Shown here piece after piece: positions 2,055-50,077 of a stretch of 64,000 nt of DNA (the first letter of the stretch is position 1; each line of letters begins with the position of its first letter). Source of the DNA: Vitrella brassicaformis CCMP3155 (Eukaryota; Protista; Chromerida); NCBI GenBank assembly GCA_001179505.1, contig CDMY01000340.1, positions 49,259 to 113,258 on the forward strand. The letters are read 5' to 3'. Under the pieces are notes generated by a model. The model was not told where the DNA came from. It saw only the letters and a list, made by a program, of their open reading frames with translations, and searched no databases. The position numbers and the translations under genes were made by a program.

Positions 2055-5000
2055 CTTGGCTAGACGAGACGAGCGAGGGGTGCGTTAAGGGCCACGATCG
2101 ACGTACGTATACACACCCACAGATACACGTACAGCCAGGATTGTCTCGTCTTGTTGTGTCGAACAGCCATGGTGTGATTTCTGATGTATCGTGTGGCGTG
2201 GCAGGCCGGTGGGGTCCGTCCGTCATCCGTCCGTCCGTCCGTACTCGTTGCCTTTTTCTCTTATTTCTCTTGGTCCGTCAAGCTAGCCAGCCAGGTAGGT
2301 GTACATACGTATGTCATATCGGTAGTGCCTGCCTGCCTCCCTGCCTGCAGTGTGCCTGCCTGCTGCCGTGTTGTTTGCCCGCCCGCCAGCTGGTGTTTGT
2401 GTGTGTCTTGTGCCTGTCTGTCTGTATATCGCTGCGGTCGTCGTTTGTTTGGCTGCCCGACCAGCCAGCACACTGCACGCCTGCACACATACGTACGGTA
2501 CGTGAACACATACAAACATACATCGTGGGTGACTGACTTGCGTGGGTACCATGGATGGGATGGCACACTCATACCATGCCTCGCTTGTTTGGCCTTTGTA
2601 TGCATGCACCGCACCCTGTGCGCATGGTGCTGCTGGCTTGGTCGTTGTTGGTCAGTTGGTTTGTTGTCTTGTCAGTTCGTCCGTCCGTCTGTCTGTCCGT
2701 CTATGAGAGCGTCTGTCTGTCCGTCCGTGTCTATCTATCTTTCGTCACATCGTGGAACCCAACACGTTCACATCCATACATCCATCCAAGATACATGCGG
2801 TTGTCCGTTTGTTGCCACTAACTGCTTGCTGTATATTTTCTTGCTGCTTATTAAGTGACTGAGTGACTGAAGTGAGTGAAGTGAGTGTCTGCATGCATGC
2901 GTGCTTGCGTGCATAGGTTTGTACCTATCTATCCATTCAGTCCGTCAGTCAGTCAGTCGACCCATTTCTTCATTGGTTGGTTTGTCGTCTCCGTGTCCGT
3001 GCAGTGCACCCGCCTCATTCACTCGCCAGATTGAATGACGCTGGCATGCCTGCGCGGTAGAACACCCCCCGCCCACCACGACGGCCGCACCGCACCGCAC
3101 CGCACCCGTGGCAAGCACAGCCCTTCCTCAGTTGTGTCTTGTCATTCATGCGATGCCGTGCTGTGTTGCCCGAGTGGCGTGGCGGGCGTGCAGTGTTCTT
3201 ACATACATACCGACTGGCGGGCGGGGTTTGCGGTGCCGCCGCGTCCCCCTGCCGTCGCCGCCCACGGTTTTGCTCACTCTTCTGTCTGTCGGGACTGTTC
3301 TTCGGTCATGGTGAGTGACGTGCTCTGAAATGCTATGCATAGCTATGATATCTCATGCAGACGTACATGATGATGCATGGAATTTGTTGGCGGATGATGG
3401 GTTTGTGAGGAGGGAGGGGAGGGGAGGGGATGGACTGACTGACTCGTTCATGGGTCCATACATACATACACGCATTACCCATTCAATCAGCAGTTGTTTG
3501 CTCGAGAGGAGTCTGAACATCGGCTGGCTGGTTTGGCTGCCAGGCGGCAGGGGAGGGGGGGCGGGGCGAGGGTGTGGCATTTCATTTCTTTGCAGAGGCT
3601 GAGTACTACTGGCTGGCTGGCTTGCTGACCAACTACCTAAGCAGTGCTCTGCACCTGCCCTTTCAATTGCAGGCAGACCCACCACCCCCATACACACACA
3701 CACACTCACACACACACGAGAATGGTGCAAATGGCGCTCCACGTCTACGTCTTGCGTGCCACACTCACTGGCCTGCATACGCCTGTGCACAGGTAGGTAC
3801 ACACCCACTGTTTATACCACAGGTGCACCCACTTCTGCCTCCCACTGACTCATTGTAACTCACGGCGTTTTGTGCCGATGATCGGTGCCGACCAGACCAC
3901 CAACAAGCAGGCAGGCAGGCTGGGCTGGGCTGGGCGATATCACATCCGATTCATACGCACACTGTGGGTGCTCACATACATGGCCTGTCTGGCCACCATG
4001 GATGAGCCGCCTGTCAGTCAGACGTCTGAGTGAGAAGCCACCCCATCCAATCCACGCCACACACGCACACGTGCACGAGAATTAAAGCCACGCTGCTGCG
4101 TCAGGTCAAGCAGGTGGGAATTTGATGACACACAGAGACAGAGACATGGACAGAGAGGTGTGAGCGAGACTATCCTACTCTCCTTGTGTGGAGTGTTGTG
4201 TTGTGTTATGGCGGTGTCACTACTTGCTGCTTTGCTATTCCATTTTCCATCAACCGCGTCTTCACTGCAGAGCCTTCTCCCGCAGAAGGTCAGCGAAGCG
4301 CGGCGCCTGCGTGCGTACCGAAAAGCCGTCTGACCTCTTTGTTGCTGCTGCGTGTGCTGCCTGGGTTGTGTTGGGTCGTGGGGTGGTGTGGTGTGGTGTG
4401 CGCGCGGTGCGGTGCAGTGACATGACGTGATCTCTTTCGGTGAGTACCCAGCTGCGTGTGCACATAACGGCAGGCAGGCAGGCAAGAGAGAGAGAGAGAG
4501 GTCGGCAGGCAGACAGACAGACAACCATGTCAGTCAGTCGGATTTAAGGCATACACCACTCACTGACTCGCCAATCATTACACTCACTACTACCTCCTAC
4601 CCTACTGGCTGGTCCTACTACTACTGCTATGCTATCGTGCAGGCACTCTCTCCCTGTCTGTCTGTCTGTGTCAGTCATGTGTTTACCCGGCTGTGTGCAC
4701 GTCACGCCCACGAATCAAATCAATCAATCACGTGAGTCCATATGGTCAGGGGGAGGGTGGGTGAGGGGTGGGCATGCACACATACCGACTACTCTACTCT
4801 CGATGGCAGGCACTTTTCCCCTAAACACTTGCTGCGAGCGTGCTTCGTCTTTTTCGATAGAAGTGCTTCACTCCTACATACATACATACCCGTTGCTAAC
4901 GTGACGTGCGTGCGTGGGACACACACGACAGCATCTGTCATTCGGCGGCCGTATGGGCATTTCAAAAGTCAGTCAAGTGTTCTTGCCTGTTATCGTGGTG

Positions 5001-9624: not shown

Positions 9625-9761
9625 TTCGGTCCGACCTCCTCGCTTAGCTCGCGGGGTGCAGGGTTTGAAACCCTGAAAAAGGAAACCCTGAAGCAATTTT
9701 TGAGGAAAGTGAAAGTGAGAGCGGTGATTGGGTGTAGCTGCTACTGAAGTGAAGCAGAGGA
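9625..9761. promoter_or_regulatory. Putative bidirectional promoter between the TBC gene (-) and PGM3 (+)
   Basis: 137 bp between divergent start codons; AT-richer than flanks; contains the inverted repeat CAGGGTTT-G-AAACCCTG (9659-9675) and a further AAACCCTG (9683-9690). Confidence 0.5.
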
Positions 9762-11709
9762 ATGACCTCCATCGCGATGCACCACCCGTCCGATGCGGAT
9801 CTGCAAGCAGCCTTCTCAGGCCATCCCCCTTCCTCTTCTCCCCCTCCCCCTCTGCCCTACGGCACAGCAGGCTTCCGCGCAAACAGTGCCGTCCTCCTGC
9901 ACGCCATGCACCGGTGCGGCATCTTCGCTGCACTGCGGGCCGTCAAGACCAACCAGACTGTCGGGGCGATGGTCACGGCGTCGCACAATGTGGAGCCGGA
10001 CAACGGCATCAAGCTCGTCGACCCGACTGGCGGCATGCTGGAACAGTCGATGGAGCCCATTCTGACAGAGTTTGTCAATGCAGACGATGCTGTCCAGGGC
10101 CTGCGGCGGTTGCTCGAGAAGATTGAAGCACAGCCAGGAGTGGCCAATGGTGGCGGGGGGCGAGTGGTGGTCGGGCAGGACACCCGGCAGTCGTCGGAGA
10201 GGCTCGTCAAGGCGGTCAAGGACGGGGCTCAGCTCATGGGAGTGGAGAGCATCGTCGACCTGGGTGAGGTGACCACGCCCCAGCTGCACTTCATTGTGCA
10301 ACAGTGCAATGCCGCTGGAGCTGAGGGGCGAAGGATAGGCGAGTCGGTCTACTTCGAGCACTTTGGGGGCGCCTTTGCCAGGTTCTGGTCGCTGCTGCCG
10401 CCCTCCCCCTCCCCCGCCCCCGCCCCTTCATCCCTCTATGTCGATGCGGCAAACGGCGTGGGTGCCCTGAAGATCGCTCCGCTAGGCGAGCACCTCAGCG
10501 CCACGCTCTCCCCATCCCCTCTCTCGCTGTCGCTGCTCAACGACGGCACGCAGCCGACAGACCAGCTCAACGAGGAGTGCGGTGCTGAGTACGTGCAGAA
10601 GATGCAAAGACTGCCGCGAGGCTTCGACGCTGCAGAGATGGTGGGCAAGAGGTGCTGCTCGATGGACGGCGACGCCGATCGGCTGGTGTACTTCTCTCCG
10701 GGCGGGGAGTCGGACCACCTCATTCTGTGTGACGGTGACAAGATGGCCGCCCTCTACTGCACTGCCATTCAGCGGATGCTGGCCGAGATCGACCTGCAAG
10801 ACAAGGGCAAGGGCCTGCGGGTGGGCGTTGTCCAGACGGCCTACGCCAACGGCGCCTCCACCGCCTTCCTTGATCAGCTGCCTCACGTGGATGTGAGGTG
10901 CGTCAAGACGGGCGTCAAGCACCTGCACAGGGCAGCTGAGGAATACGACGTCGGGGTGTATTTCGAGGCCAATGGCCATGGGACGGTGCTGGTGAAGCGG
11001 GAAAGGCTGGGCGAGTGGGCAAGCGTGGTGGAGGGGCGCGACGAGAGAGCCTACGAGAGGTTGGTGGCCTTCCTGGGTATCTTCAACCAGACGACTGGGG
11101 ACGCACTGGCCGACCTCCTGGCCACTGAGGCGGCACTCAAGTAAAGATGAGAGGAGGCTGATCTGATGTCTTCTGCACACCCCTTTGTTCTGTCTGTCTG
11201 TCTACAGGTACCTCAACATGTCATTTGCTGACTGGGCGGCCCTCTACACAGAGTTGCCCTGCAGACAAACCAAGGTCACCCAACAGATCCACGGTCCACA
11301 CACGCGCTTTGTTTGTCCATTGTTCATTTTGTGTGTTCGTCCGTCCAGGTGGCGCTGCCCCGGTGGGTCTTGAATCGCCTACAGCCCCACCCAGAGCACG
11401 AGAAGACCCTCACCCAGCCCACTGAGCTGCAGGCAAGGGAAACCACGGCTGCCTCACCCACACAAGCATCCATCGGGCACGTGTCGTGCTGTCACTCAGG
11501 CATCAGTCGACACCGCCGTCTCCTCACTCATCGCCCAGCACGGGGATGGCTACAGTGCTCGGGCGTTCATCCGCCCGTCGGGCACTGAGGACGTGTGTCG
11601 GCTTTATGTGGAGGCCACCACCGCCGAGGGAGCAGACCGCCTCAGTGACGAGCTGAAGGCGAAGATCAGTCAATTCGGTGCACAGATGGCCAAAAGCGTG
11701 ATGAAATGA
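9762..11709 (+). CDS. PGM3: Phosphoacetylglucosamine mutase (PAGM/AGM1); exons 9762-11140, 11208-11274, 11349-11432, 11500-11709
   Basis: Motifs YGTAGFR, MVTASHN (phosphoserine loop), DGDADR (metal loop), GVYFEANGHG (sugar loop) and RAFIRPSGTEDVCRLYVEA (phosphate loop). All exon phases are consistent; the third intron is GC-AG. Confidence 0.96.
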
Positions 11710-34355: not shown

Positions 34356-34666
34356 CTTGAGCTAGCTCCTCCAACTACACTACGGCAACTACGCCTCAAA
34401 CCAACGAACGAACGCGTCGAAAGGACGCGAGCTTGGATCGCCAAAGTGCAAGCTGGGAAAGATTTGGATGCGGGGAAGCTAAACCATCTCAAAACACACG
34501 ATTGCAAGAAGCTGTCCAAGAGCTGCTTTCGACAAGAAGAATTCGCGACCTTCGCTTGTCGCACTTTTTGTCTTGGCGAAGCGAAGGTGGTTGCAGTTGT
34601 GATGGCTGTGGGCAACACACTTGCCGTCAGCGGTCCAGTGCGTGGCGCAGACGCCACGTCATTGCT
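34356..34666. promoter_or_regulatory. Putative bidirectional promoter between ZCCHC10-like (-) and the receptor RING gene (+)
   Basis: 311 bp between divergent ATGs, lower GC, no microsatellites. Confidence 0.45.
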
Positions 34667-34735
34667 ATGAAGGTCCGGTCGGCAGTGACTGACGTCCTGC
34701 TTGCCTTGCTCTTCTTGCTTTACTCGTGTGGGGCG
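34667..34735 (+). other. Signal peptide of the receptor RING protein
   Basis: [23 protein letters not shown]: basic N-region, Leu-rich core, small residues at the predicted cleavage site. Confidence 0.75.
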
Positions 34736-37700
34736 CAGCAACCAGACGGCCGCCGGGGCAATGATTCAGCGCTGGACAGCCATCCCGATGTGTTCTATTT
34801 CGTAAGGACACCACCACGGATCTTTCTTGAGCACTTTTGATTGCAGGCCTGCCGAATGAGATTGTCTGTCTGTCTTTCTCTGTCTGTCTGCCGTGTGTGT
34901 GCTGGGCTGTGTGTGTCAGTTGAAGGGAGGGTACCGGGAGGAGCTGGGCCACTCTCTGAAGGCCCACAATGGCATCCTTGCCCACGGCCGGTGGCTGGTG
35001 GGCATCGCAACGACCGACACGGCCAACCTGCGGTCACCCGACAACAGCGTGGCCATCCAGACGGTGGCGGCCTTCGGCGACCGAGACCATGTCAGGGCAG
35101 CCGTCCACGGCAGGAATGTCGGCTTCCTCACAAAGGACGGCATTGCGGTCTTCCACCTCAACAGTGACGGCCACTTCAACCAGACGGCTCAGCTTCTGAC
35201 GGAGCCTCATCGATACGTCACTCACGAGCTCAACGGCGGACTGCTGGCGGCGACTGTTGAGAACCGAAACAAGCGCCGGCGTGTACTGCTCTACACGGGG
35301 GAGGAGGTGGATGAATCGCCAGATGCCGAGGGGTCTTCTGGTGGTGAAGGTGGTGCTAGCAAGTTCAAGGCCTACCACAACTTCCGTCGTCAGGCGTCGT
35401 CGGGTGTGAGTCTGCCGATCATCGGCGACGCCGAGCACGGGTTCGGGTCCAGCCTGGCCCTCACCGACCTGCACCTCCTCGTCGGCTGCGGCCAGTGCGA
35501 CGACGGAGGCTCCATCTACTGGTACTCTGTCGTCAGGGTGGACGACCACCTGCACCACACCAACAGCAGCGACAGTGACAGCGACGGAGAAGCAGAGGGT
35601 GCAACATCGTCGACATCACCACAGCCCCGCCCCGCCCATGTGTCTTGGGATTACGGCGGCCGGCTGGTGTCACCCTTCGGTGACGGCCTTTCCACCGCAC
35701 TCGGTAGAGAGGCCGTCAGGCTGGGGTTCGGCTCGACCGTGTCAACGAATGCTCTCTTGACGCTCATCGCCGCGCCGCGGCTGGGAGTGGCCCTCGTGTA
35801 CGAGACCGCCTCCCTGGTCAGCCAGGCGACCAACAAGGTGCAGCAGATGCGATGGATTGCGGCACACAAGATGGAGGGATGCCAAAATAGCGACGGCGCA
35901 GGTGTCGGCGATTGCTCGCTGGACGGCATGGCAGAGTGGATTGAGGGCGTCATGGGATCTGAGAGCTTCCTCCTGCGCGTGGCGCCTGTCTGCGTGCTCA
36001 AGGACGACGGAGCCACCGAGCTGCCGGGCGGCGAGTCGATTGTCGAACGGCTGCCTGTGGAGCCGTCGTCGAGTGAGTTGGGCTTCAGCATGACACAGGA
36101 AGTCGACATGAGGCAGCAGGTAGGTCCCATCGAGGGTGCACCGCAGCCCACCAGGATGAGGCTCTCACATGACGTCTGTCCGTGTGTGATTCGTTCAGGC
36201 ATCGATAGCGATCCTTGGTGCTCCGGGAGGCAACTTTGTCAACGTCTATCACATCCAGTTGATTCACGAGGGGCAGAACGCCACCTCCACCCGCAGCAGC
36301 CGAGTCACGTGCACCCTCACGCAGCAGGTTCGCGACGAGGGCTACGACCGGTCGATGCCCGCCGTGCGGCTCCACCCACACCGTCCACCCCGATCATCGA
36401 GGTCATCTTCGTCAAGAGTCGTGGGACAGAAGTCATCGACGAAAGAGAAGGCATCCAGCCGTTTCCTCAACCACAGCATCCCGCCCTCCAGTAGACTCGG
36501 GCACTCGGTCGCTTTCGTGGCCGGCAAGGTCTTCTTCGGTGCGCCCTTCGTGCCCGCCATCCAGGCCAGCCTCGCACCCGTCATGGGAGCCCACGAGTCC
36601 GGGGGGGAGGACGCCGACAAGCCAGCAGGTGCTGCGACACCTCCCGGCTCGACCGCCGCTGGCATGCCCTCCTCACTGCCCCGCGGCTCGTCGACTAACC
36701 CTCGGCTGGCGGTGATAGATCCGGCGGAGATCTTGTCAGCATCTCAGGGGTCGGGGGGCCGGGCCACCACTGACGTGCAGCCGGACGCCACGGCCGCGGG
36801 GCCGGCAGTGGTGCAGTCGACGGGCAGGGTGTACCAGAAGGCATACTGTCCATTCAACCACTACATGGTGGTGGAAGCAGCACACAAGCGGGGGTCGGGG
36901 GACAAGGAATCGTCTCCCGAATGCCGCCCGTGCAAGGAGGCAACGTTCTCGCTTGGAGGCTTCGCACCGGTAAGTGCCATCACACCAGCTAAGCTAGTCC
37001 CCTTCCTTCCCACAGGCCTGCCTGCCTGCATCGCACACGCCGCCTTTTCATGTCTGTCTGTGGTGCTCACTTACTTGCAGGAGTGTGAGGAGTGTGTTGG
37101 CGTGGAGAAACCTGAGGGTGCCACGTGGATCGAGGGCGCTGGGTGTGTTTGGGACTGCGGCGATGGCCTCTGGCCGCCCGAGTGCCTCGAGTGCCACATC
37201 ACCAAGGCGAGAGAGATCGAGCACGCTGCAGCCGAAGGGCGTGGCGAAAGTCTAGATCTCATCAAGCCCAAGTACTCCCACTGGCGAGACCTGGGGCCCG
37301 AGTGCACATGGCAGTGTGACGAGCCGCTCGTGTTTGATGCTGCTGAATTCGCCTGTGTGGGCCGGCTGCTGGCCCTGGAGGTGGTGCGTGTGGAGAACGA
37401 CCCCTTGCTGCCCTCGACAATCCCCGTCGAGACCTCCGATGGCTTTGTGGTCCTCCGGGAAGGCACTAAACTGCAGCTACGGATCACCATTTTCGCCGGA
37501 GAAAGTGAGGGAGGACAAAGAGAGAGATGCCTGCTGATATGATTGATGCAGTGCTTCATTCCTGATGTGTGGTCCTTGGTGCTCTCCCGCAGGTGCTGTT
37601 GACGAGACCCGCGTGACGCTCGGCCCCCCAGCTGGGAACGAGGAGGAGATCCAAATCCTGCCCGACGACGTAGTCACTTTCCCAGCCATGGCGCCAGGTA

Positions 37701-40700
37701 CGCACACATACACCTCCTCCCTCTGGGCGCCTGCCACATGCACAACGAACGCCATCCGTGTCATGCCGTGTGTGTCTCGCCAGGCGAGACCGTGAGCTAC
37801 AACCGTCAGCTGGTGTATGTGAGTCCACAGCGGGCCGCTTCCGAAACATCGGGATCCGTCGCTCTTTCCGTCAACGACACAAACGACACCACATGGACGT
37901 AAGAGAAGTCTACGGGAGGCCGCGGAAGGAGAGGCGCACGTCTAGTCTATCTATTGCTTGGCTGGCCCTGTCTGTGTGCTCCATGCCATGCAGTGGTGCT
38001 GTGTTCAACGAGCTGGATCGTGTCCTCTTGAGGCCGTCATTCCGATCGGACATTCACGTGCTGGGCGTCCCAGAGCAGCTGGACAGCAACAAGACGGCCG
38101 CTTTCCACATCACACTGGGCGGCGAGCCACCCGACCTGCTTTGCGTCATCATGAAGTCCGAGGGGCACGACGAGGAACTCAACCAACAGACCTTGCTGCC
38201 GGCCAACGTCTCCGCACTCCCGTACCGCCTTCAGCTATATCCTCCCATGATCTGCTGGGTCGACGCGAGTGGCGAGAGCTCGGTGCCGGCGAGTCCTCCC
38301 GAGACGCCCCCAAACGGCCTCACCTTCTCTTCCACCGACGAGCAGGCCGACGTGGCGGGAGCCGGCGTGCCGAGCTCTCCACTGGGGGCCCTCACGCCTC
38401 ATGTCTTCAGCGTGCAGTCGTGGCGGGATCCCGTCAAAGTGGAGGTGCGTGCCGTCGATGACAAGATCTGTCGCGAGGGGGACACGGCCATGGCCGGCAT
38501 CCACTTCTCCATCGTTACGGACGGCGAGTCGCCCTACGACCCTGAGAAGGGCGACCCCACCTTCATATTCCACCCTTCGTCTGGGACGACAGATGGCGAC
38601 GGCAGCCCGCTGGCGGGGCTCATCCCTGTGGATCATGACTTGGAATCCCTGGCGGCTGACAAGGACGCGGACAGGGTCAAGCCGAAAAAGGGAGCAGCGG
38701 TGCGGACAGTGCGTGTGCGCAACTTTGCGGAGCCTCGGTTGATCCTACGGAGCAGCGTCAAGCAAGAGGAGCTCGAGATGATTCGCGAGGTGTCACCGAG
38801 GTCCTTCGCGGTCGAAGCAGTGTCAGGGGATGGTTCGGCTCCCCAGTGGCTGCGTGAGATCCGTCCCTACAACGTGTCGGTGTCGTGCCGGCCGGAGAAA
38901 GGGGACCGTGTGCGGGTGCTGGTCGACCCCATGTCGTCAACTCAGCTTGCCTTCCTGCGGCCTGTGTCGCAGTGGGGTGCCGACCGATACAGCAACGGCA
39001 GCTCTATCGGCCTCCCGCTCCCCCACATTCCCGCTGCCAGCCACTGGATCGCGGCCTCACGCTTCTTCGTCGACGTGCTGTTCAGCCACGGCAGGCCTCT
39101 CGACGTCACCCTCTACCCTGTGGCCTTCCAAGACGGCCGGTCCAATGAGAACAACACCATTATCCGGGTCAACCACTCGGTGTGGTCCTTCGACCTGCTG
39201 TCGCCCGCCGCCGCTCGTGCACAGGACATGCGCTTCACGGGCCATGGGCGAGCGCCGCTGTGGCCGGCAGACGGCATGAAGCTCGACCACTACAACTCCC
39301 TGACGCTGCTGGACACATGGGGTGGCAACATGAGCGCCTTCCACACTCAGAGGAGTCTGCCCGACGACTGGCGAGAGGTGTCGATCGTCAAGAGCTTCAC
39401 GCTCAACGACACCGACCTTCCGAAGCTGACCCTCACTGACGTGCCGCTGAGCATCAGCGAGCACCAGCCGCCTTCCCCCTTCGGGCTGCAGCTGGAGGTC
39501 ATCCCCCAGGGCAACGTGACGGTCGAAGTCATGACTGACCACCCCGGTGCCTGCAACATATCGGTCAGCACCGACTGGGAGGCCGAGAACAGTTCCGTCC
39601 TCGTGGTGTTCGACCCCTCTGAGGCGAGGATGTGCAGAGGACAGGACGCCATGGACTGCAGCCCCAGGAGCCAGCGGATCGCCGGCACTCACGTCTTCGT
39701 CCTGCGCTGCGACACGGAGGCCTTGCCATCCACTGCTTCGTCGGTCCTCTTGGTGGCCAGGGCCATCGCTGTGGAGGACAGCCTGCGGGACCTTCTCTTC
39801 TACGAGACCTACGCGCAGGCCCGCATTCCAGTCCGCAGGGCCAACCCGCACAAGCAGATCCGTCTCCGAGCTCACCTGAAGAGCGGTGCGGTGGCGTCAC
39901 CCGACGAGCCAATAGAGGTCCTCATCAGGCTGGTGGATCCGCCGGGACTCAACGTGACGGTGAACGTCAAGGACGCCACGGAGACTCTGGCTCTGTCGCC
40001 ATCGAGCGCCCCGCTGCTGGCCAACATGACGGGGGAGTGGTTTGCGCGGCAGCGGCAGATCAGGCTGATGGTGACTGAGCCCGAGAACGGGCTGGTGCGC
40101 TTCAGTGCCGATGCGTGGGACGAGGAGAAGGTGGTGACTGTGAGGGTGCTCATGTGGTCTGAGCCAGGCGACACGAAGCTCGCCGAACTGCACAGGCTCT
40201 ATCGGGCTATCGGAAGGTCAGCCCACACCTCAGTGCGCGCACAATATGCCGGTCACCGGTGCATTCATTGTGTCTTTTCTTTTCCTTTTGTGTTTTCAGG
40301 CTGTATCTGTCAGCGTCGCGGCGTCGTGACGGCCAGCCATCGAGTGACGTGACCACTCGGGTGATGAACGATGACGTGAGAATAGAGGAGATCAACTCGT
40401 TCAGCTTCGCCATCCTGCCGCTGGCCGACCCGTCGGACGTCTACATCGACATCGACATGCCCCTGTTGCACCCCACCACCCCAGCTCTTATCACCGCACT
40501 CGAGGGGCGCTTTCTGCCACACCACTTCGGCCTTCTACAGGCACCTTCGACCAGTGTCCGCGTGGAGGTCACCGCCCTGCCGATCGATGGCCACTCACAC
40601 CCCCTCTACTTCTCATACCAGCCCAACTCTTCCAGCCTTAGTTCGGGCTCGATGGCCGTCACTCTCACAGCCGACGAACCCGACACTACCGTCTACCTGT

Positions 40701-43700
40701 ACTCGCCTCGAGACTCGCACCTGCTACTCGAGACACCCCTGGACGCCCCAAATGCAGCAACAGACGAGCAGCAGCCACTGGAGCAAGAGCCACAGGCGAG
40801 CGGAGAGAGTGAGGATGCGCCAGAGACCGGGAACGTGACGGCTTCGCCGGCGGACGGGACCTCTGCCTTCTTCAACACGACCGCTGTCGACACAAACAGC
40901 ACCGAGTTCGCTTCCTGGAACAATTCGTCGACAGGGTGGGTGAGGAGCAGACTGCTCCAGCGCAACGACACGACAAACAGGACGGGAAGAGAGGCGATCT
41001 TCCATTGGTGGGGCTACCAGCTGGTGCACCGCATCCTGCTTACGGATGAGAGCGACTACAACGAGTCGGCATACCTCACGAGCATCTCCCAGGCATGGTT
41101 CAAGGAGCAAGATCGAATGGAGGTGGCGCTCACGCCGTCGATCGTCACGCTGAGGGCCGCTTCCCCGACATCTGGCACCCGTCTCAACGGCAGCGTACCG
41201 GCAGCCAAGACAAGGGCTGAATCCTACGAGGTGCGGCTGACGGGGACCCTCGACGGTACCTCAACGCTCAAGTTCTATCGGACGGATCCGGACAGTCCTC
41301 GGGTCAACTTGACTTTCCTTCTCGAGGCCTGCCAAGCGCCCGATGATGGCGTCAAGACGGTCTTCTACAGGCTCGGTCGATCGGTCGGCCGCAGCGATCG
41401 AGCCCTGCCCAACGACAGAGGACCCTACAAGCTTCCCTTCCAGATCACCCTGCCCCCACAGCCGTCCGCCTGCCTCAACGTGACTGTCTCGCCGCTGTGG
41501 TCGGCCGACCTCGGCCCCATGGCTGACGCACAGTTGGGAGTCACCCACGAGCTTGACTCGAGTCGCGACATGGTCGTCAGGAAGCAGTCGCTTGTCATGC
41601 CAAGGCCGCAGCTTCTCGTGCTCGTGTCGCAGGAGGCGGCACCATCGGTGGCGCTGGATCTGGAGAAGACGGAGGGCATCCCGTCGAACCGGCCCAGCTT
41701 CGTCCCTGAAGACAGCCTGTGGGCATTCGATGTCACCATGGAGGATGACGATGCCTCAGAGGCAGGTGGCAGTGACGGCAGCTCCAAGAGGCTGCTTGCA
41801 CCAGTGAGCGGGGATGAGAGCCGGCAGCATGTCAGCGCCCGGCTGGCTCTCCGCTTCAAGCTGCTGCAGGAGCCAATAGGGGCCATATTGCTCTCACTGC
41901 GCGACGGCTCGGCCCCTCTGTCCACGAGCAGGTGGAGCTCAGCCAACAGCAGTGCCGCCCACTCCGGCCCCTGCTTCCGCACTGTCAAGAACCTCGCCGA
42001 TGTGGCGGTGGACAACAGCACGTGGGACACCGCTGTGTTGGTGACTGAGATAGAGCTGGCACCGCACGATGTGGCCCTGCCGGGGATGATGCGACACTGT
42101 GAGATTGAGGTCACCGTCACGGGGACATCGGTGCCGGACGACCCTTACTACCCCCTCGATAAGGTGCGCCGCACAACCGACAGCTCACAAGAGAGAGCCT
42201 CAGGGAGGAATGCACGGAATGAATGCGTTTGTCTTTCGAATGCATCCTCTCCATCCATCGATCAGGTGATTCTGCGAGTGCCATTGTACGTGGTGTTGAC
42301 GACTCGGCCGGCAGTGATGCTGACACCGCTGTCAGCCACTCGCGCAAGGGACGGCACATCGATTCTCGAGTATCGCGTGGCGCTGTCCACCCGGCCGTCG
42401 GCCCCCGTAACCATCGAGGCATCGACCGGCGACACGGTGAGCAAGCAACAGAAAAAGGGCAGAGAGCGGGGTGACAACCGATACACGCCTCATCTCGTTT
42501 TGCCCTGCAACAGGTCAACATGACGCCTCCCCAGGTCACCTTCACGCCCGCCAATTGGTCGCTGGAGGGCACCGTCCTCCGCTTCTCGGCCGTGGAGCAG
42601 GACCCCGCCAACCCAGCCAACGCCACGAAGGAGAGCGTCAACTTCAGAATAGTCGACGGCGACTGGATTTACAACTCCAAGGGCCTCTCCCTCATCGGCA
42701 CGCCGGCTGTCGACCTCATCTGGGTGCTGCACGAAAGGCAGGCGGGCGCTGTGGCCACTGAGGGAGAAGGAGGCTTCTCCACGCGGAACCCTGCAGTCAG
42801 CGACATGCTGCCGAGGCTCCCTGAGAAGGATGACGCCTCGCCCGATGAATCGTCGAGCAACACCAGCAGCGGTATGGGCATCGTTGAGCGGGGCAACGGG
42901 TCTCTGTCGCTCGAGCTGCCGCCGCTGGTTGACACCAGCCCCGATATTGTCATCGAAGCGCGTGGGCCGTCGACTGTCTTTTGGCACGAGCGGTTCCTCC
43001 ACTACACGCTGCGCTTCCCGTGGCGGCCGAGAGAGCAGGTCACCATCCTGGCGAGCTATGACTGGCTGGAGTTCGACCTCTCTTCAAATGTGTCCTTCGC
43101 CACCTATCAAGCCGGCATTGAGGTACCTGCCTCCGTCACTGCCCATCCATCAAGACAGCAGCCAAGCCATCTGCCTTGCCTGTCTCCGTGTGTCCATCCA
43201 TCAGATATTCTACGACCCGGATCGTTACTGGCCGTACCCAATTCAGATCGACGTGCGCATCAAGAAGAGCTTCGAGCAGATGCGCGAGGAGGCACCATTC
43301 GTCGAGTTCTACGCCAGCGATGGCGGCTACTCCGAGAAGCAGGAGGCGGTGGCCAACCAGACGGCCAGCTTCTGGCAGGTGCAGCGGAGCTTCACACACA
43401 CCATCAAGGAGGTCTCAGACCCCGCTTACCTCGACGCAGACGTGGTACGCGGGAGGGAGAGAGCAGGGAAGGTCGGCCAGCAAGCATGTATTGTTTGTTC
43501 TCTCTGTGTCTTCTGTTCAGGAGGTGTTCCGCCCGAGTGCCAATTTTCTGGTGGGCATCGATATGCGGGACGTCAGCCGCACCCTCCACTTCGTCTTTGG
43601 GCCACACCCATTGGACCGCAACCCAAGCCTCAAAGGGTGGGTGGGCTGAGCACAGCACCGGCAAACTACACGACTGACTCGCACAGCACATTGCCCTGAC

Positions 43701-46700
43701 AGCACACACACATTTCCTCGTTCGTTGTACGTATGTATGTATGTGCGTCTCATGCAGGCTTGCGTCGAATCTCGCGGCTTTGTTCGACATCGACCGAAGC
43801 CGCATCGCCCTGCCGGAGTCCCTGCTGCATGAGCAGATGCACTCCCACTATAGCCAGGCCTCGCCCAACGCCACCGACGAGCAGTCTGACGATCCACAGA
43901 TCGACGGGCGGATGCTGCGCCGCCTGCAGGGCTCCCAGCAGCCGGCCTTGAGTGGTCTGTTTCCCTTAGCGGCTGATGGCGGCCCCAGACGCGCGAGTCT
44001 GATCATCCTGCCCGTCCCCGAGTGGCAGCGGGCACGCGACTTCGTCTCCAAACAAAAGTCGCAACCTGCATTCGTCAACGATATCGTCACCAAACTCCAG
44101 TACGCGGCTCGGAAATCAAGATCTACGATCGTGGTGCTGCCGTCACTGTTTCTTGCGTGTGCGTTTGTTTGTCTCTCCCTCCTTCAGGAAGCGGTTGACG
44201 GCCAAGGCGCAGAGGAACGCTGCGCTGGGTCTGGTAGAGATGGAGACGGATGTCGAGTGGCTGGGGGGAGTGAAGCTGCAGCAGGTGGTCCCTGTAGAGG
44301 AGGACGTGTGCGAGGCCGTCGGCTCATCCATCCCCGGAGAGGACACCAAGTGTGACACGTGTGTCAACCAGCCGTCATGCGGCTGGTGCCTCAAGGGCAG
44401 CGGGGAGGGAATGTGCGTCAGAGGTGTGGTCAGCCCGGCCTATGAGCTGCCTGACGGCGAGATCTGTGCCGCGTTCGAGTCGGAGGACTGCCTTGACCTG
44501 TGCACCGACTACGACCTCACGTGCGACCTCTGCACCTCCGTAGGCCTGTGCGAGTTCTGCCACTACCAGAACCCCAAGTGGGATGCAGGCAACATCCCCA
44601 CCGCCGACCCCTTTGTTGAGCACACCGGCGCGGGATCGCCGCCCCTCACGTCGTCCCTCAAGGAGAACTCGTCGGAGCCGCGCCTGCTGCTGCCGCCTGG
44701 TGACGCGGGCAAGTGTGAGGTCAAGGGTGCACTACCCGGCTGTGCGGACATCGGTGGCGTCCCGTCGGACAAGTGCGAGGACATCACTGTCAACGCTGAC
44801 CCGTGTCGGGGCTTCCACAACTGCACCTCATGCATTCAGAAATCTGGGTAGGTTCAGCAGACAGACAGAAGCCAAGTGTGTCCCCCAGCCCAGCTCAGCC
44901 ACACACGAACGAATCAATCTCTTTCCACGCCTCTCTCTACTGTTCATCCATCCGTCCGTCTGTCAGGTGTCTATGGTGTCTGGATACGGCCACATGTCAG
45001 CGGGGCACGGCCGAGTTTGGTCCGTTCGAGCCGCCCGCCGTGTCGGGGTGTCACGAGTGGCGGCACGGCGGGGAGGAGGGCGGCTGCCAAACAGACAGCT
45101 GCCTCAACTTCGGCAACTGCGTCGAATGCTCCTCACAGCCAACCTGCGGCTTCTGCTCGGCATGGGAGGTCAACGAGGGAGACAGCGAGCGGCTCGACAA
45201 GCGCATTCTCTCACCCAGATGTGGATCTGGTGAGTGGGAGGAGGAAACCGAGAGAGAGAAGGAAGGGCACAGTTTTCGTGCACCGCACCGAGGGGATTCT
45301 TGTGTGTCATCCATCGATCAGGCACGCAAGGCGGCAACTTTCGATGGTCAGCGTCCCAGCTGGTGTGCCGTGACTGGAAATTCGAGATTACCAGCTGCAA
45401 CGAAACCTGCCCCTCTGAGATCAAGGTCCCTAGATATCAATGAACGAACACAATGCATGGGTGGATCATAAAATCAAACACGCAAACGCACGCTGGCTGC
45501 GTCGTTGGTCTTTGCAGGAGCTGCGTGCTGAGACGGGGGAGATATCCCATGGCTCCGAAGACTACACGCTTAGAGTGAGCGAGGCGAGCCCCACAATACC
45601 AGACGACCAGACCCGTCCAGCCGACCCACTGACTGGCGCGTTTTTGCCTTTTTTCCATTCTCTCATTCTTCATCAGTATGCGCCGCGGCAGGAGTGCCGT
45701 TGGCTGATCAACCCCGGAGCGGGCAACAACGGCAACTCGGCTCCCGGGCGGCTCACCCTGACTGTGGAGATGCGGGAGCTGCTCCCTGGCGATTTCCTGA
45801 AGCTCTACGAAGGCACCAAGAGGCCAAACAGGAGACCCATCCTCGACGAGACCTCCGTTGCCAAGTAAGACATAATAAAGCACCAGGCAGGCAGGGGATG
45901 GCGTGTGTTGTGATGTGTCTGTCTTTGCCCCTCCCTCTCAGGCCGGGGTACTCGTCAGTCATGAAGGCGCAGGCCCCACTGCTGGTGACGTTCAACTCGG
46001 ACGAGGAGGGGGAAGGCTTCGGGTTCTCTGTCAGGTGAGCGGGCACTTGCAGTATATATGCTGCCGGTGGTTCTTTCTGATATATGGGTCCGGTCCATCC
46101 ACGTGTGTGTCAATCAGCTGGACGTGGCTACCGGAGCCTTTCACACCGATGAACGGCTGGATGATCACGTCTGTGGTGCTGGGGGTGTTGGGGGCCTGCG
46201 CCATCTCGGTCCTTCTCGTCGTGTGCATCAAGCGGATACGCATGGTCAGTTAAGCCACGCACAGACGCGTCCACGTGAAAGCTTCACAGACGAGCGGGGG
46301 GGAATCGTGCGTGCGTGTGTGTAGAACATGGCTGATCGGGGTGACGGTGTTGGCGACAACGGCCAGCAAGCTCCATGGGGCGACTGGAGCGAAGACGACA
46401 AACGCAGATTCAAAGAGGTATGCAGGCAGGCTGCCACACTAGCAGGGACACATGTGGGTGGGAGTCGATCATGTCTTGCTTCTGTCGATGCCTGTCTGTC
46501 TGTCTGTCTGTCTGTGGATGTGTGTATATGCCAATCAGTTTTGCAAGCCGTTCAAGTGGGGGGAGCATATGGAGAAGCAGCAGGAGCCGTGCAGCATCTG
46601 CCTCACCGACTACAACAAGGGAGACGAGGTCAGCCAAAGAGACAGACACATGCACCTCCCTCCCACACCGAGTCCGTGCTGTTGAACACTGTCCATACGG

Positions 46701-48640
46701 TGTCTGTCTGTTGTCATCACTGCCTGCAGGTCCGGCAGCTCCCCTGTTGTCACTTCTTCCACGTCACCTGTGTGGATCAGTGGCTGGCGCTGCACCTCGA
46801 CTGCCCCCTGTGCAAGGGCAACGTTATCGAGATGCTTGCGCACAGGGAGCAGCTCACAGCACCCCCACAGCAGCAGCAGCGCAAGGCCATGCGGCAGACC
46901 AACGGCGAGGCCACAGCCGCGTCAGACCCGGACGTCGAGCGCCAGACGTCCATACCCTCTTCCGGCGGGCCCGTGGCGCTGCCATCGATTGTGCTGGAGG
47001 ATAGAGGTCTCGATGCCGGCCGGCAGGGCTCTCTGACGCCCAAGAGCTCCGCCAGCTGGGGCAGCCGAGGGCGCGGTCCACACGAGAGTCCGGGTGTCGA
47101 TGATGCGGACGACGAGGTGCAGGTCAACGTGGACACACGCAGCGAGGGGCTCGCCTTCGAGCCTATGGAGCTGCGAGAGATGGTCACCACCATGTCGGAT
47201 TCATTCCTGTCTGGCCAGCCAGAGCACCCTCACAGTGGGGGCATGGCCGACCACCGAGACGCGGACCATCCCACCATGCGGTCGCCAGGGCTGCCGACGT
47301 GCAGCAGCGCGCCCATCGGCGCGCGCCTGTCATCGTATGCGTGGCGTGTCGACACCCCGAGCCCGGTGGCGGTTGGGTCGTCCCCTCAGCGGACGCATCG
47401 CACGGACAGCAGCCCGACGCCCAGCGGCCATCACGTCAGTCGCAGTCGCAGCCGGCAGGTCAGCGACCGGATGAGCGAGGACTCCGACCACGGCCACGCA
47501 TCGTCCAGCAGCCGCAACGCTCACCACTCACGGTCTCTGTCGCGCATCGAGGGCCAGCCCCCCCACGTCTGTCAGTCGCCCTCTCGCTCTCAGCCCCCTC
47601 CCAGCCCCACCCCCAGCGAGGCTAGACGGCCCCCCCTGCCCCCAGAGCACCGAATCAGCCAGTCGCCACGAAACTCCACGCGTGGGATCGTCACACAGAG
47701 TTTCTCAATGGACGACTTTAGGGGGAGAAGACCCGCCACGCGCGACCACCAGACGCCCGTGGCGTGTGTGAGTTTGGATCTGGTGGATCTGAGCAACCAC
47801 GAGGACTGGACTGAGGGGCAGCCCGACACGGGATTGACCACTGAAGGGCCAGCGCCAGTGGACAGGGGCGATGCGACGATGGACCATCACCAAGGGGATG
47901 GGGGATCCTCTGTTCGATCCAGGCAGTCACGACACGTCAGTATGAGGGGCCCGTCGTCCCCTACGGCTTCTGCCACGCGGTCCCCCAACGTCATGGCGAC
48001 ACACTCGTCGATGCGGGGCGTGTGGATGGACGACATCGACCTGCTGGAGCCGTGCATCACCCGCTCTAGCAAGCGGCGTGCAGACCCCACAGGCGGCTCG
48101 CCTGATGCGCCGAGCGCCACATCAAGAGGGTCGAGCGGCAGTGCCATGTCGAGGGAGAAGCGCATCGACAGTACTGTCAGTCGCCGCAGCCCCAACGCCA
48201 AGAGGCCGACGCACCCGAGTAGCCAACGCGAGGCCGATAGGCTGTCGGTGCCTGCAGCTGGGGGCCACCATCACTCTCACCTTCGTGATGAAGAGATCGG
48301 CTCGGTGATGTCCCACGGTGACAGTGCGGAGATGGCGGCTCAAGTGACTTCGGCGTCGCCCTCTCACGTGGACGACATCACCGACATGGACATGGAGGGA
48401 GGGGTGGTGGGACTCCCACCCATCGGCAGCAGCGTGTCGGGCCGGGCATCCCTCCCTCACTCACACAAGGAGTCGCCCCGGAAGGACCGCAGTCTGCCGC
48501 CCCCGAGTCCCCGACCCATTGGCAGTGCCACGCCTCTCCCTGGTGTTGGCTCGTCCAATGGGCGCTATGGTGGCGATTCGCACGGGAGCCCGCAGCGGCC
48601 GAGGGTGTATGGGAAGGCACGCGAGAGCGAGATACAGTAG
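34667..48640 (+). CDS. Giant type-I membrane receptor-like RING-H2 E3 ubiquitin ligase (23 exons, 11,901 nt CDS, 3,966 aa)
   Basis: Exons 34667-34801, 34920-36119, 36199-36969, 37081-37504, 37593-37697, 37784-37898, 37994-40216, 40300-42163, 42266-42436, 42514-43122, 43205-43444, 43521-43636, 43758-44099, 44188-44847, 44967-45229, 45322-45425, 45518-45574, 45677-45864, 45942-46034, 46118-46244, 46325-46417, 46539-46628, 46730-48640. All are joined by GT-AG introns with matching phases. Contains signal peptide, FG-GAP-like repeats, Cys-rich repeats, PSI, CUB, TM and RING-H2. Confidence 0.82.
34920..36560 (+). other. FG-GAP / integrin-alpha-like beta-propeller repeats
   Basis: Recurring [49 protein letters not shown]...[25 protein letters not shown]. 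Confidence 0.65.
36840..37350 (+). other. Cys-rich repeats (GCC2/GCC3 or TNFR-like, plus two KP...W...C.W.C units)
   Basis: YCPFNHY...[21 protein letters not shown]; [20 protein letters not shown]; [20 protein letters not shown]. Confidence 0.55.
42266..42620 (+). other. Ig/Calx-beta/cadherin-like repeat (clearest copy; weaker copies across about 37400-43450)
   Basis: [52 protein letters not shown] matches the Y.V.L...P...V.V...TFT..NW pattern. Related segments: [56 protein letters not shown]. Confidence 0.5.
44300..45425 (+). other. Four PSI (plexin-semaphorin-integrin) domains
   Basis: [71 protein letters not shown]. Confidence 0.8.
45518..46125 (+). other. Juxtamembrane CUB domain
   Basis: GEISHG...[11 protein letters not shown]...LTLTV...GDFLKLYEG...[20 protein letters not shown]. 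Confidence 0.75.
46158..46229 (+). other. Single transmembrane helix
   Basis: [24 protein letters not shown] followed by the basic stop-transfer KRIR. Confidence 0.85.
46590..46813 (+). other. RING-H2 finger, split by intron 46629-46729
   Basis: [13 protein letters not shown]|[28 protein letters not shown] = C-x2-C-x14-C-x-H-x2-H-x2-C-x10-C-x2-C, with the conserved Trp. Confidence 0.93.
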
Positions 48641-50077
48641 ACAGACAGGCCTGTATGGACGTAGATAGACGATAGTGGTGTCGGTTGCCATGTGTGAGAT
48701 GAGATGAGATGAGATGAGATGAACGAACGGATGTGTATTTTATCAAGGGGAGCGATTGCAATGATTGCAATGCAATGCGTTCAAGCAGGTGGTCGGTCGG
48801 TCGGTGCGTGCGTAGCATGGTGCATGGATTGGACATGCACACGGTAGGTTTAGTGTGTACCCAGTGGCCAGAGTGACTGGAGGTGTGGGTGTGGGTGGGG
48901 GTGTGAGGCTCCCTACCACTTTCTTGAAAACCGACGGAGGGACGGAGGGAGGGACTGAGTGGGATGCCATTTGTCTGAGCGTACGTGCAGGGGATCGATG
49001 TGGTGGTCTGTCGACCTACCTAGTTTATCTATCTAGCTAGCTCGTGTGTCTGTCGGTACGTGTGAAGGAAGGTATCGCAACTTTATCAAGAATGTCCATG
49101 CGTCATGGCGTCATGGATATACACACACATCTCTGTCTGTCTGACTGTCTTTCTGTATCCACACAGACAGCAGACCTATCCTTGCCATGCTTGTTATTGT
49201 GAGCCAGCGACACGCCGGCCCGCCCAGCGATGACGGGGGGCCACGGCCGGCGCACTTGGTTGGTTGTGTGTGGGTCGGTCATGTGTACCCCGCCCTGTTC
49301 ATGTGTCTTTGTGCAGCAGCAACAATTCCTTCCTCGGGTGTGCCGATCGATCCCTTCTCTCTCTATCTCTCTTTGTCTGTGCCTGCCTGCCTGCCTGCCT
49401 GAGTGTATGAGAGGCCTGCCTATCTGGCTGGCTGTACCTATACCTACCTGCGTGTGTGTATACAATACACCTGCCTGCCTGCCTGCCAGTTGTGTGTTTG
49501 ACTCGCTCAGAGAGAGGACGAACGATATCGATGGACGTCAGAAGATGCAACAAGCGAACAGCCAATCGTCAACGTGGCTTATGGTGCATGACTTCTGAGT
49601 GCATTTGTGCGCCCGCTCTCCGTGTCTCATTCGAAAAGCACGCAGCCACACATATATACACCAGGGCGGTCCGCCCACCGTTTCCATCACCATCACTGCA
49701 TACACGCACTATCAATATCCGACAGAAATGGCAAAAACCAGCGCAGAGCGCCCAGGCCATAAGGGAAAAAACTGCTGGCCCGCCTGACCAAGCTGCTAAA
49801 CCCAGACCCTGCATGTGTCTCTCCGTCCTCTCTCTGTCACCAAAGTGTCCGTCTGTCTGACTCCTCCAATCAATCAAGGCCAACCCACTCGTTAACTCAG
49901 ACAGACAGACTGAAAAACAGAGAGAGAGAGAGAGACAGACACCGCGCCGGCGGTGGCATACACACACCGCACGCCCAGATAGATGTTTACAAGGGCGACA
50001 GGTGTAGACAGACAGACAGACAGACACGAAGATCCATAGACTAACTCATGAACGCACTCAAGAAGGCAGAGTAGTCC

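What the first reader, a model, noticed from the sequence alone, without database searches (positions are those of the whole stretch)
34667..48640. A 3,966-aa single-chain receptor E3 ligase: integrin-like propeller + PSI x4 + CUB + TM + RING-H2
Seen: 23 exons splice with matching GT-AG phases into one ORF running signal peptide, FG-GAP-like propeller, Cys-rich repeats, Ig/Calx-beta-like repeats, SEA-like module, four PSI domains, CUB, one TM helix, a canonical RING-H2 about 60 aa after the TM, and an about 600-aa disordered tail. The ORF track hides this: it fragments the ectodomain and puts the CSIC half of the RING in another frame. Established: TM-RING-H2 ligases (ZNRF3/RNF43, RNF13, plant ATLs) have small ectodomains. 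PSI/CUB-containing attractin and MEGF8 work with a separate RING ligase, MGRN1, to ubiquitinate surface receptors. Inference: this protein may fuse an attractin/MEGF8-like adhesion or sensing ectodomain directly to its ligase, giving ligand- or adhesion-gated surface ubiquitination in a free-living relative of apicomplexans. I do not know of a description of this architecture.
Basis: partly seen in the sequence, partly recalled or inferred. Interest (0 to 1): 0.9.

Follow-up and report, generated by a model that had tools for sequence, protein, structure and literature searches.

The report
Giant-ectodomain transmembrane RING ubiquitin ligase
The alga Vitrella brassicaformis expresses one 23-exon gene for a 3,966-residue single-pass membrane protein. 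About 3,200 residues of adhesion-type modules lie outside the membrane and a canonical ubiquitin-ligase RING finger lies just inside, a layout I found described nowhere; its function is untested.

Summary
A spliced 12,215-nt cDNA contig confirms 14 introns, a second run confirms a 15th, and its length fits the whole CDS plus short UTRs.

The protein has:
- a signal peptide;
- about 3,215 non-cytosolic residues with 64 Cys and 44 N-glycosylation sequons;
- one strong TM helix;
- a RING-H2 51 residues after the TM. It is split by an intron; joined, it scores 56.7 bits against Pfam zf-RING_2;
- a 608-aa Ser/Pro/Arg-rich tail.

Ectodomain labels are only partly verifiable:
- Four PSI-type cysteine cores are non-random.
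- Two bacterial-adhesin-type (Calx-beta/LapA-like) modules are significant.
- The FG-GAP propeller is a lead.
- CUB rests on pattern only.
- SEA is unsupported.

I found no homologue of the ectodomain or tail in any database searched.

It is best read as a single-chain receptor-type E3 of the ZNRF3/RNF43/GRAIL layout, with an ectodomain on the scale of MEGF8 or attractin. The likeness to MEGF8/attractin is analogy; homology is not shown.

Earlier unchecked notes of this scan list other signal peptide-ectodomain-TM-RING genes elsewhere in this genome.

Verdict: new variant of a known kind, with moderate interest.

The parts
34667..48640 (+). Whole coding region: 23 exons, 22 GT-AG introns, 11,901 nt CDS, 3,966 aa
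   Evidence: The 12,215-nt spliced contig of run X6 is consistent with about 232 nt of 5'UTR, the CDS and about 82 nt of 3'UTR.
34667..34738 (+). Signal-peptide-like N-terminus (aa 1-24)
   Evidence: Basic start, hydrophobic core with Kyte-Doolittle 1.81, small residues before a Gln-Gln. It starts at the first in-frame ATG after an in-frame stop.
34920..36843 (+). Probable FG-GAP_2-type beta-propeller region with low-complexity inserts (aa 46-660; exons 2-3)
   Evidence: The nearest Atlas clusters are FG-GAP_2 (score 0.91, 170 shared features). Blade-like motifs recur (G-F-G-S ... hydrophobic run ... G-A-P). Pfam, PDB and AlphaFold gave nothing.
36847..37359 (+). Cys-rich stretch (aa 662-795, about 15 Cys), crossing the in-frame intron 36970-37080
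   Evidence: Direct reading. No Pfam family matched.
39405..39569 (+). Adhesin-type Ig-like module 1 (Calx-beta/LapA-like), aa 1388-1442
   Evidence: Scores 28.6 bits against an HMM of bacterial adhesin repeats, against at most 5.7 in 200 locally shuffled controls. phmmer hits.
42347..42642 (+). Adhesin-type Ig-like module 2, aa 2307-2379, crossing intron 42437-42513
   Evidence: Scores 24.5 bits against the same HMM. It carries the T-F-T-x-x-N-W signature of the bacterial repeat.
44309..45222 (+). Four PSI-like cysteine knots (aa 2813-2865, 2877-2920, 2978-3020, 3032-3077). The third forms only after the RNA-confirmed intron 44848-44966 is spliced out.
   Evidence: Motif count and shuffles. 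Pfam PSI_integrin E-values of 0.006 and 0.03 are below threshold.
45390..46124 (+). CUB-like juxtamembrane module (aa about 3103-3229), spread over exons 16-20
   Evidence: Pattern-level match to the CUB consensus by direct reading. The exon pieces gave no Pfam or PDB hit. The joined sequence has no reference and was not tested.
46155..46235 (+). Single transmembrane helix (aa 3240-3266), followed by basic residues
   Evidence: Kyte-Doolittle 2.97. It is the only such peak besides the signal peptide and one weak beta-strand-like stretch.
46590..46813 (+). RING-H2 (aa 3318-3358), split by intron 46629-46729
   Evidence: Joined: zf-RING_2 at 56.7 bits, E 2.9e-15. Against RLIM, ARK2C, Arkadia, ZNRF3, EL5 and RNF13, E is 1e-14 to 1e-11. 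The intron is spliced out in runs X5 and X6.
46814..48637 (+). Low-complexity cytosolic tail of 608 aa (Ser 16%, Pro 10%, Arg 10%; 9 Lys)
   Evidence: No homologue found.

Best explanation
This is one gene encoding a type I single-pass membrane protein that acts as a single-chain, receptor-type RING E3 ubiquitin ligase.

Shown:
- The 23 exons are spliced into one mRNA and one ORF.
- The order is signal peptide, about 3,215 aa of Cys- and sequon-rich modules, one TM helix, a 51-aa linker, a canonical RING-H2, and a 608-aa low-complexity tail.
- The ectodomain modules are a probable FG-GAP propeller, a Cys-rich stretch, at least two adhesin-type Ig-like modules, four PSI-like knots and a CUB-like stem.

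Inferred:
- The large part faces the outside or the lumen, and the RING faces the cytosol.
- The RING recruits an E2~ubiquitin. It ubiquitinates cytosolic lysines of neighbouring membrane proteins or of the protein itself, marking them for endocytosis and degradation.
- The ectodomain supplies partner, matrix or cell-wall binding, and this decides where and on what the ligase acts.
For: - One transcript: run X6 holds a spliced 12,215-nt contig. 14 introns are shown removed, a 15th by run X1. The contig length fits the CDS plus UTRs.
- The 31-mer shares held by the cDNA runs match the exon fraction: 0.72 against 0.723 expected, and 0.83 against 0.855 expected.
- Topology: signal peptide and one TM helix. 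There are 44 N-x-S/T sequons and 64 Cys before the TM, against 1 sequon after it. Basic residues follow the TM.
- RING: full-length Pfam match at 56.7 bits.
- All eight zinc ligands align to the RINGs of RLIM, ARK2C, Arkadia, ZNRF3, EL5 and RNF13. I know these as active ligases, which was not checked here.
- Also present are the Ile after the first Cys, the Trp of D-x-W-L, the Pro of C-P-x-C and a basic residue after the last Cys.
- The layout matches the class described in 10.1101/2025.09.11.675358: a type I protein with the RING in the same chain, as in ZNRF3, RNF43 and GRAIL.
Against: - There is no experimental evidence for ligase activity, localisation or substrates.
- No orthologue was found, so conservation cannot support function.
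- Both AlphaFold models were unusable (pLDDT 34.5 and 43.2).
- In run X5 contig depth steps from about 6 to about 43 near 43.07 kb. This could be 3' bias or an additional shorter 3' transcript.
- The seven 5' introns are not directly shown by reads.
Confidence: 0.6

Rival explanations
1. It is mainly a structural adhesion, matrix or cell-wall protein. The RING serves chiefly to ubiquitinate the protein's own tail and so set its own turnover or trafficking, and does not regulate other receptors.
For: The ectodomain is built from modules typical of adhesins: FG-GAP lead, Calx-beta/LapA-like repeats and PSI-like knots. It is far larger than any ligand-sensing ectodomain of known single-chain E3s. 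PMC4021871 reports that RNF133, a PA-TM-RING ligase, catalyses self-ubiquitination.
Against: The 608-aa tail has only 9 Lys, which is few for a dedicated self-ubiquitination target. Nothing distinguishes cis targets from trans targets.
Confidence: 0.22
2. It is an endomembrane (Golgi, endosome or vacuole) sorting or quality-control ligase, like the PA-TM-RING proteins RNF13 and RMR. Its large domain would be lumenal and would bind cargo, so it would not be a cell-surface receptor.
For: The RING is closely similar to those of RNF13 and the plant RMR protein AT5G66160. PMC4021871 lists RNF13 as an endosomal membrane ligase and places RNF133 in the ER. The signal peptide-TM-RING order is the same.
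Against: No PA domain was found. A 3,200-aa adhesin-like module set is unusual for a sorting receptor.
Confidence: 0.15
3. It is an artefact: two or more genes joined by the model or by transcript assembly, or a decaying gene.
For: Contig depth steps in run X5 near 43.07 kb. The tool warns that a contig across two genes does not prove one transcript. The 5' introns are not read-supported.
Against: A 3,966-codon frame stays open across 22 phase-matched GT-AG introns. Coding potential is continuous. One 12.2-kb spliced contig ends within about 230 and 80 nt of the predicted start and stop. Splicing completes two motifs, the third PSI core and the RING.
Confidence: 0.03

Closest known systems
Single-chain type I membrane-spanning RING E3s: ZNRF3/RNF43 and the PA-TM-RING family (GRAIL/RNF128, RNF13, RNF167; plant RMR)
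   Same: The order is the same: signal peptide, non-cytosolic domain, one TM helix, then a RING-H2 a few tens of residues after the TM, in one chain. RING similarity is E 7.6e-13 to ZNRF3 and 7.4e-12 to RNF13. The class is defined in 10.1101/2025.09.11.675358 and PMC4021871.
   Different: Those ectodomains, from my knowledge, are a single PA-type domain of roughly 150-200 aa. Here it is about 3,215 aa of unrelated modules, and no PA domain was found.
MEGF8-MOSMO-MGRN1 and attractin-MGRN1 receptor-type ligase complexes
   Same: A very large type I ectodomain containing a beta-propeller, PSI modules and a CUB-like module. In MEGF8 and attractin the juxtamembrane 'Stem' has a CUB-like fold (10.1101/2025.09.11.675358). 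Here a CUB-like stretch likewise sits directly before the TM. In both cases a RING ends up beneath the membrane.
   Different: In those complexes the RING is a separate protein, MGRN1, bound to the tail. Here it is in the same chain and is a RING-H2 of another subtype. No Kelch, EGF, C-lectin or laminin-EGF domain and no MASRPF motif was found. No sequence homology was detected. Vitrella has its own MGRN1 (tree file of 10.1101/2020.05.25.113944).
Soluble RING-H2 ligases RLIM/RNF12, ARK2C/RNF165 and Arkadia/RNF111
   Same: These are the best sequence matches for the RING itself (E about 1e-14). About half the residues are identical over 46 positions, including all the zinc ligands.
   Different: From my knowledge they are nuclear or cytosolic proteins without a signal peptide, TM helix or ectodomain.
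Integrin alpha and FG-GAP/Calx-beta adhesins (bacterial LapA-type giant adhesins)
   Same: A probable FG-GAP-type propeller at the N-terminus is followed by beta-sandwich modules and one TM helix. Two modules are homologous to bacterial adhesin repeats.
   Different: From my knowledge integrin alpha has a short tail without a RING. The bacterial proteins have regular tandem repeats, whereas here BLAST found no internal repeats. The gene has 22 spliceosomal introns.

Membership tests
RING-H2 finger (Pfam zf-RING_2, PF13639) | C-x2-C ... C-x-H-x2-H-x2-C ... C-x2-C with a score above the gathering threshold | tested here: met
   The joined 49-aa domain scores 56.7 bits against the 27.3 cut-off and covers profile positions 3-44 of 44. 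The regex matches at aa 3318-3358.
RING-H2 finger (Pfam zf-RING_2, PF13639) | E3 activity: binding and activation of E2~ubiquitin | not testable with these tools
   Only the residues known to contact the E2 (Ile, Trp, Pro, a basic residue after the last Cys) can be read off the alignment to the solved RINGs.
Single-chain type I membrane-spanning E3 (ZNRF3/RNF43/GRAIL layout) | Signal peptide, one TM helix and the RING C-terminal to the TM in the same polypeptide | tested here: met
   Hydropathy. The exon joints from the TM exon through to the RING exons are shown in cDNA contigs.
PA-TM-RING family | Protease-associated (PA) domain in the lumenal or extracellular part | tested here: not met
   No PA hit on any exon, even at E up to 10.
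Attractin/MEGF8 family | Kelch propeller, EGF and laminin-EGF (plus C-lectin in attractin) in the ectodomain | tested here: not met
   None found by Pfam on any exon. The propeller lead points to FG-GAP_2, not Kelch.
Attractin/MEGF8 family | Conserved cytosolic MASRPF(A) motif linking to MGRN1 | tested here: not met
   The motif is absent from the 3,966-aa product.
PSI domain (PF01437/PF17205) | Cysteine-knot pattern with the C-x-W-C core and a Pfam score above threshold | tested here: inconclusive
   Four cores are present, with 0 of 2000 shuffles reaching even one. Pfam gives only 14.5-16.8 bits against a cut-off of 27. Atlas was uninformative.
CUB domain (PF00431) | A beta-sandwich of about 110 aa with the CUB sequence signature | not testable with these tools
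   The domain is spread over exons 16-20, so the joined sequence has no reference. The pieces gave no hit. The resemblance rests on pattern reading only.
FG-GAP beta-propeller (integrin-alpha-like; PF01839/PF14312) | Seven FG-GAP blades recognised by profile or by fold | tested here: inconclusive
   Atlas features give 0.91 and 170 shared features to FG-GAP_2 clusters, but recognition is below the usual level. Pfam and PDB gave nothing. The AlphaFold model had pLDDT 34.5.
Calx-beta / LapA-type adhesin Ig-like repeat | Homology to the repeat unit | tested here: met
   Two modules score 28.6 and 24.5 bits against an HMM of bacterial repeats, against at most 5.7 in shuffles. Some of those bacterial units match Pfam LapA or Calx-beta. 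Pfam's own models do not hit the Vitrella segment, and the fold model failed.
SEA domain | SEA fold or profile match; G-S-[VI]-V cleavage motif | tested here: not met
   No Pfam hit on exons 11-13. No G-S-[VI]-V motif.
Plant ATL RING-H2 family | N-terminal TM without a large ectodomain, and a GLD motif before the RING | tested here: not met
   There is a signal peptide and a 3,215-aa ectodomain. The 51-aa linker has no GLD motif (sequence shown).

The most novel reading that the evidence does not exclude
The protein is a natural single-chain counterpart of the two-part attractin/MEGF8-MGRN1 machine. In this reading a giant propeller-PSI-CUB-stem ectodomain senses contact or ligand and gates a RING in the same chain. 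It would be one member of a wider Vitrella repertoire of receptor-type E3 ligases with varied ectodomains, which this alga would use as a main route of transmembrane signalling or surface remodelling.
Probability: 0.15. Interest if true: 0.8.

Novelty: new variant of a known kind. Interest (0 to 1): 0.5.

Why it matters
10.1101/2025.09.11.675358 describes the structures and mechanisms of receptor-type E3 ligases as poorly understood, and leaves open what a massive ectodomain such as MEGF8's does.

This gene is a natural protein in which such an ectodomain and the RING are covalently joined. It shows that the two-part design can exist as one chain. It also offers a simple test object: one gene, with no adaptor to find.

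If the other signal peptide-ectodomain-TM-RING genes noted in Vitrella are real, chromerids may have expanded receptor-E3s much as plants expanded receptor kinases. That would bear on how the free-living relatives of apicomplexans sense and remodel their surface.

The gene is an orphan in one species and nothing about its function has been tested, so its present value is as a lead.

Tried and rejected
- First gene models: my DP models (18 and 21 exons) were wrong at three places. They had the donor at 44141 instead of 44099, and missed introns 45575-45676 and 36970-37080. RNA and consensus corrected them.
- Pfam on all exons at E up to 10: nothing but the RING and sub-threshold PSI.
- PDB sequence search on six exons: no meaningful hit.
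- phmmer of exon 7 against 1.84 billion representatives: only bacterial repeat proteins, plus one 35-aa fragment copy.
- Word-index homology searches on exon 2, the half RING and the tail: none.
- Two metagenome scans: none.
- Atlas on the PSI exon and exon 8: uninformative.
- AlphaFold on exon 2 alone, and on one Ig-like module with 44 bacterial repeats: pLDDT 34.5 and 43.2, so no fold search was run.
- BLAST self-comparison: no internal repeats.
- The joined CUB region and the full joined protein have no reference, so I did not submit them to any tool.
- Rejected readings: recent bacterial origin, because the gene has 22 spliceosomal introns; and membership of the PA-TM-RING, ATL or attractin families, because their defining features are absent.

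Full report
**The gene**

The region has about 60% G+C. Coding potential on the + strand is continuous from 34.7 to 48.6 kb and switches frame repeatedly.

I built a model by dynamic programming over GT-AG introns, using codon log-odds and splice-site weights. I then corrected it with RNA data and by inspection.

The final model has 23 exons and 22 GT-AG introns of 76-121 nt, with the ATG at 34667 and the stop at 48638-48640. The product is 3,966 aa. The ATG is the first in its frame after an in-frame stop.

**RNA evidence**

Runs X5 and X6 hold 0.72 of the sampled 31-mers of 43600-48700. The spliced model predicts 0.723. Runs X2-X4 hold about 1.0. X5 and X6 therefore lack the introns and behave as cDNA.

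I laid four runs on 40850-46849. X6 has one contig of 12,215 nt that skips 14 introns at exactly GT..AG:
- 42164-42265
- 42437-42513
- 43123-43204
- 43445-43520
- 43637-43757
- 44100-44187
- 44848-44966
- 45230-45321
- 45426-45517
- 45575-45676
- 45865-41 (that is, 45865-45941)
- 46035-46117
- 46245-46324
- 46629-46729

X5 shows 13 of these 14; it lacks the 42164-42265 joint.

The joint 46417|46539 was dropped by the repeat filter, because a (CTGT)n run lies inside that intron. A contig of run X1 shows it: the contig runs off at 46424 into letters that match 46546 onwards.

Contig position 5756 lies on window position 40850. The model places 5,523 nt of CDS upstream of that point and 6,378 nt downstream. 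The contig therefore fits about 232 nt of 5'UTR, the whole CDS and about 82 nt of 3'UTR.

For 34430-40300, X6 holds 0.83 of the words, against 0.855 expected. The seven 5' introns have good consensus sites and correct phases but are not shown by reads.

Caveat: in X5 the contig depth is about 5-6 upstream of about 43.07 kb and 42.7 downstream. This may be 3' bias on a 12-kb mRNA, or an additional shorter transcript.

**The protein: what is firm**

- Hydropathy finds a signal-peptide-like start (aa 1-24).
- It finds one strong TM helix at aa 3240-3266 (Kyte-Doolittle 2.97), followed by basic residues.
- The 3,215 residues between the two hold 64 Cys and 44 N-x-S/T sequons. The 700 residues after the TM hold one sequon. 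This fits a type I topology.
- The RING is split by the RNA-confirmed intron 46629-46729.
- The last exon alone scores 22 bits on zf-RING_2, below the 27.3 cut-off.
- The joined 49-aa domain scores 56.7 bits (E 2.9e-15) over the full profile.
- Against solved structures the RING aligns to RLIM, ARK2C/RNF165, Arkadia, ZNRF3, EL5, an RMR protein, RNF13 and RNF38, at E 1e-14 to 1e-10. All eight zinc ligands align.
- The residues known to contact the E2 are present: Ile after the first Cys, the Trp of D-x-W-L, and the Pro and following basic residue of C-P-L-C-K.
- The first RING Cys lies 51 aa after the TM.
- The remaining 608 aa are Ser/Pro/Arg/Gly-rich with 9 Lys and have no homologue.

**The ectodomain: what is and is not supported**

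- PSI. The core C-x2-C-x5-C-x-[WF]-C occurs four times, at aa 2827, 2884, 2984 and 3043. It occurs nowhere else in the six-frame translation of the 64-kb window and in none of 2000 shuffles. The third core forms only after intron 14 is spliced out. Pfam PSI_integrin reaches E 0.006 and 0.03, below threshold.
- Adhesin-type Ig-like modules. phmmer of exon 7 against 1.84 billion representatives found only eight proteins. Seven look like bacterial repetitive adhesins, with a repeat of about 107-115 aa and Pfam Calx-beta, LapA or fn3_6 matches. The eighth is a protein that carries only a short copy of an exon-7 fragment (listed under noticed in passing). An HMM of 44 such bacterial units scores 28.6 and 24.5 bits on aa 1388-1442 and 2307-2379, against at most 5.7 in 200 locally shuffled copies. 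No further copies rise above noise, and BLAST finds no internal repeats.
- Propeller. The features of exon 2 sit nearest to FG-GAP_2 clusters (0.91, 170 shared features, 91 of 100 hits), though recognition is low. Blade-like motifs recur. Pfam, PDB and AlphaFold gave nothing. It remains a lead.
- CUB. The stretch just before the TM reads like a CUB signature: G-x-I-S, C-x-W-x-I, D-x-L-x-L-Y-E-G, L-V-T-F-x-S-D, G-F. It is spread over five exons, the pieces hit nothing, and the joined sequence has no reference. It is untested.
- SEA. No support.
- The central 1,900 aa are otherwise unrecognised.

**Relatives**

Earlier follow-up notes identify the genome as Vitrella brassicaformis. I found no homologue for any of these:
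- exon 2
- exon 7, apart from the bacterial repeats
- the half RING plus the start of the tail
- the tail
- exons 7 and 14 in JGI metagenomes

The length limits of the word-index search mean that a full-length orthologue could not have been found that way. The one unrestricted search found none. The gene is an orphan as far as these tools can see.

**How it most likely works**

Shown: the architecture and the transcript.

Inferred from the established behaviour of RING-H2 domains and of type I membrane-spanning E3s (10.1101/2025.09.11.675358; PMC4021871):
- The RING, tethered about 50 aa under the membrane, recruits E2~ubiquitin and modifies cytosolic lysines of nearby membrane proteins or of itself.
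- This drives their removal.
- The ectodomain sets binding partners and location.

The rivals are a structural adhesin that regulates only its own turnover, and an endomembrane sorting ligase like RNF13 or RMR. A chimeric-model artefact is very unlikely, given a 3,966-codon frame across 22 phase-matched introns and two motifs completed by splicing.

**Comparison with what is known**

It works like, and meets the layout of, the single-chain receptor-type E3s (ZNRF3/RNF43, GRAIL). It is not a PA-TM-RING member, because it has no PA domain.

It resembles MEGF8/attractin-MGRN1 in scale and in module types: a propeller, PSI modules, and a CUB-like stem next to the membrane. The MEGF8 and attractin Stem domains are CUB-like (10.1101/2025.09.11.675358). 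It lacks their defining domains and the MASRPF motif, its RING is of another subtype, and Vitrella has a separate MGRN1 (10.1101/2020.05.25.113944).

Four literature searches found no description of such an architecture.

Other notes of this scan list further signal peptide-ectodomain-TM-RING genes in the same genome, with ARM, ankyrin or Cys-rich/PPC ectodomains. I did not check them. If they are real, this gene is the largest example of a local theme.

**Verdict**

It is a new variant of a known kind. Interest is about 0.5: the architecture is unusual and cleanly documented, but it is an orphan with no functional data.

Noticed in passing
window 39096-39200 (exon 7) and protein P0003: P0003 is a 745-aa database protein with no Pfam family. 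It carries a 35-aa stretch 91% identical to this exon segment and nothing else in common. A fragment of about 105 nt seems to have been copied into another gene model.
   Followed up: partly
window 36970-37080, 42164-42265, 45575-45676: Three introns have lengths divisible by three. At least 36970-37080 and 45575-45676 have no in-frame stop, so retaining them would keep the ORF and add 37 or 34 aa. cDNA shows 42164-42265 and 45575-45676 spliced out.
   Followed up: partly
window 34602-34670: An upstream ORF of 22 codons starts at ATG 34602 inside the inferred 5'UTR and overlaps the main ATG at 34667 out of frame.
   Followed up: no
window about 43071 and downstream of 48640: In run X5 contig depth steps from about 6 to 42.7 at about 43.07 kb. 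Its 5,306-nt contig is about 970 nt longer than the CDS remaining from that point. This suggests either a long 3'UTR or a merge with a neighbouring transcript (arithmetic).
   Followed up: no
window 46481-46527: A (CTGT)n microsatellite lies inside intron 21. It made the read-laying tool drop the joint there.
   Followed up: no
window 34430-40300: Marine-sediment and microbial-mat metagenome runs of 2023-2025 hold 5-37% of the exact 31-mers of this stretch. The organism or a near-identical strain therefore occurs in those samples.
   Followed up: no
window 35453-35479 (aa 263-271): The motif D-S-D-S-D-G-E-A-E fits the D-x-D-x-D-G calcium-loop pattern of FG-GAP blades. It sits in a low-complexity insert and may be chance.
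   Followed up: no
window 9753-11141 (+): An exon of a phosphoacetylglucosamine mutase (Pfam AMG1_III at E 5.7e-45, plus PGM_PMM_I). The other large open frames I tested in the window had no Pfam family.
   Followed up: no
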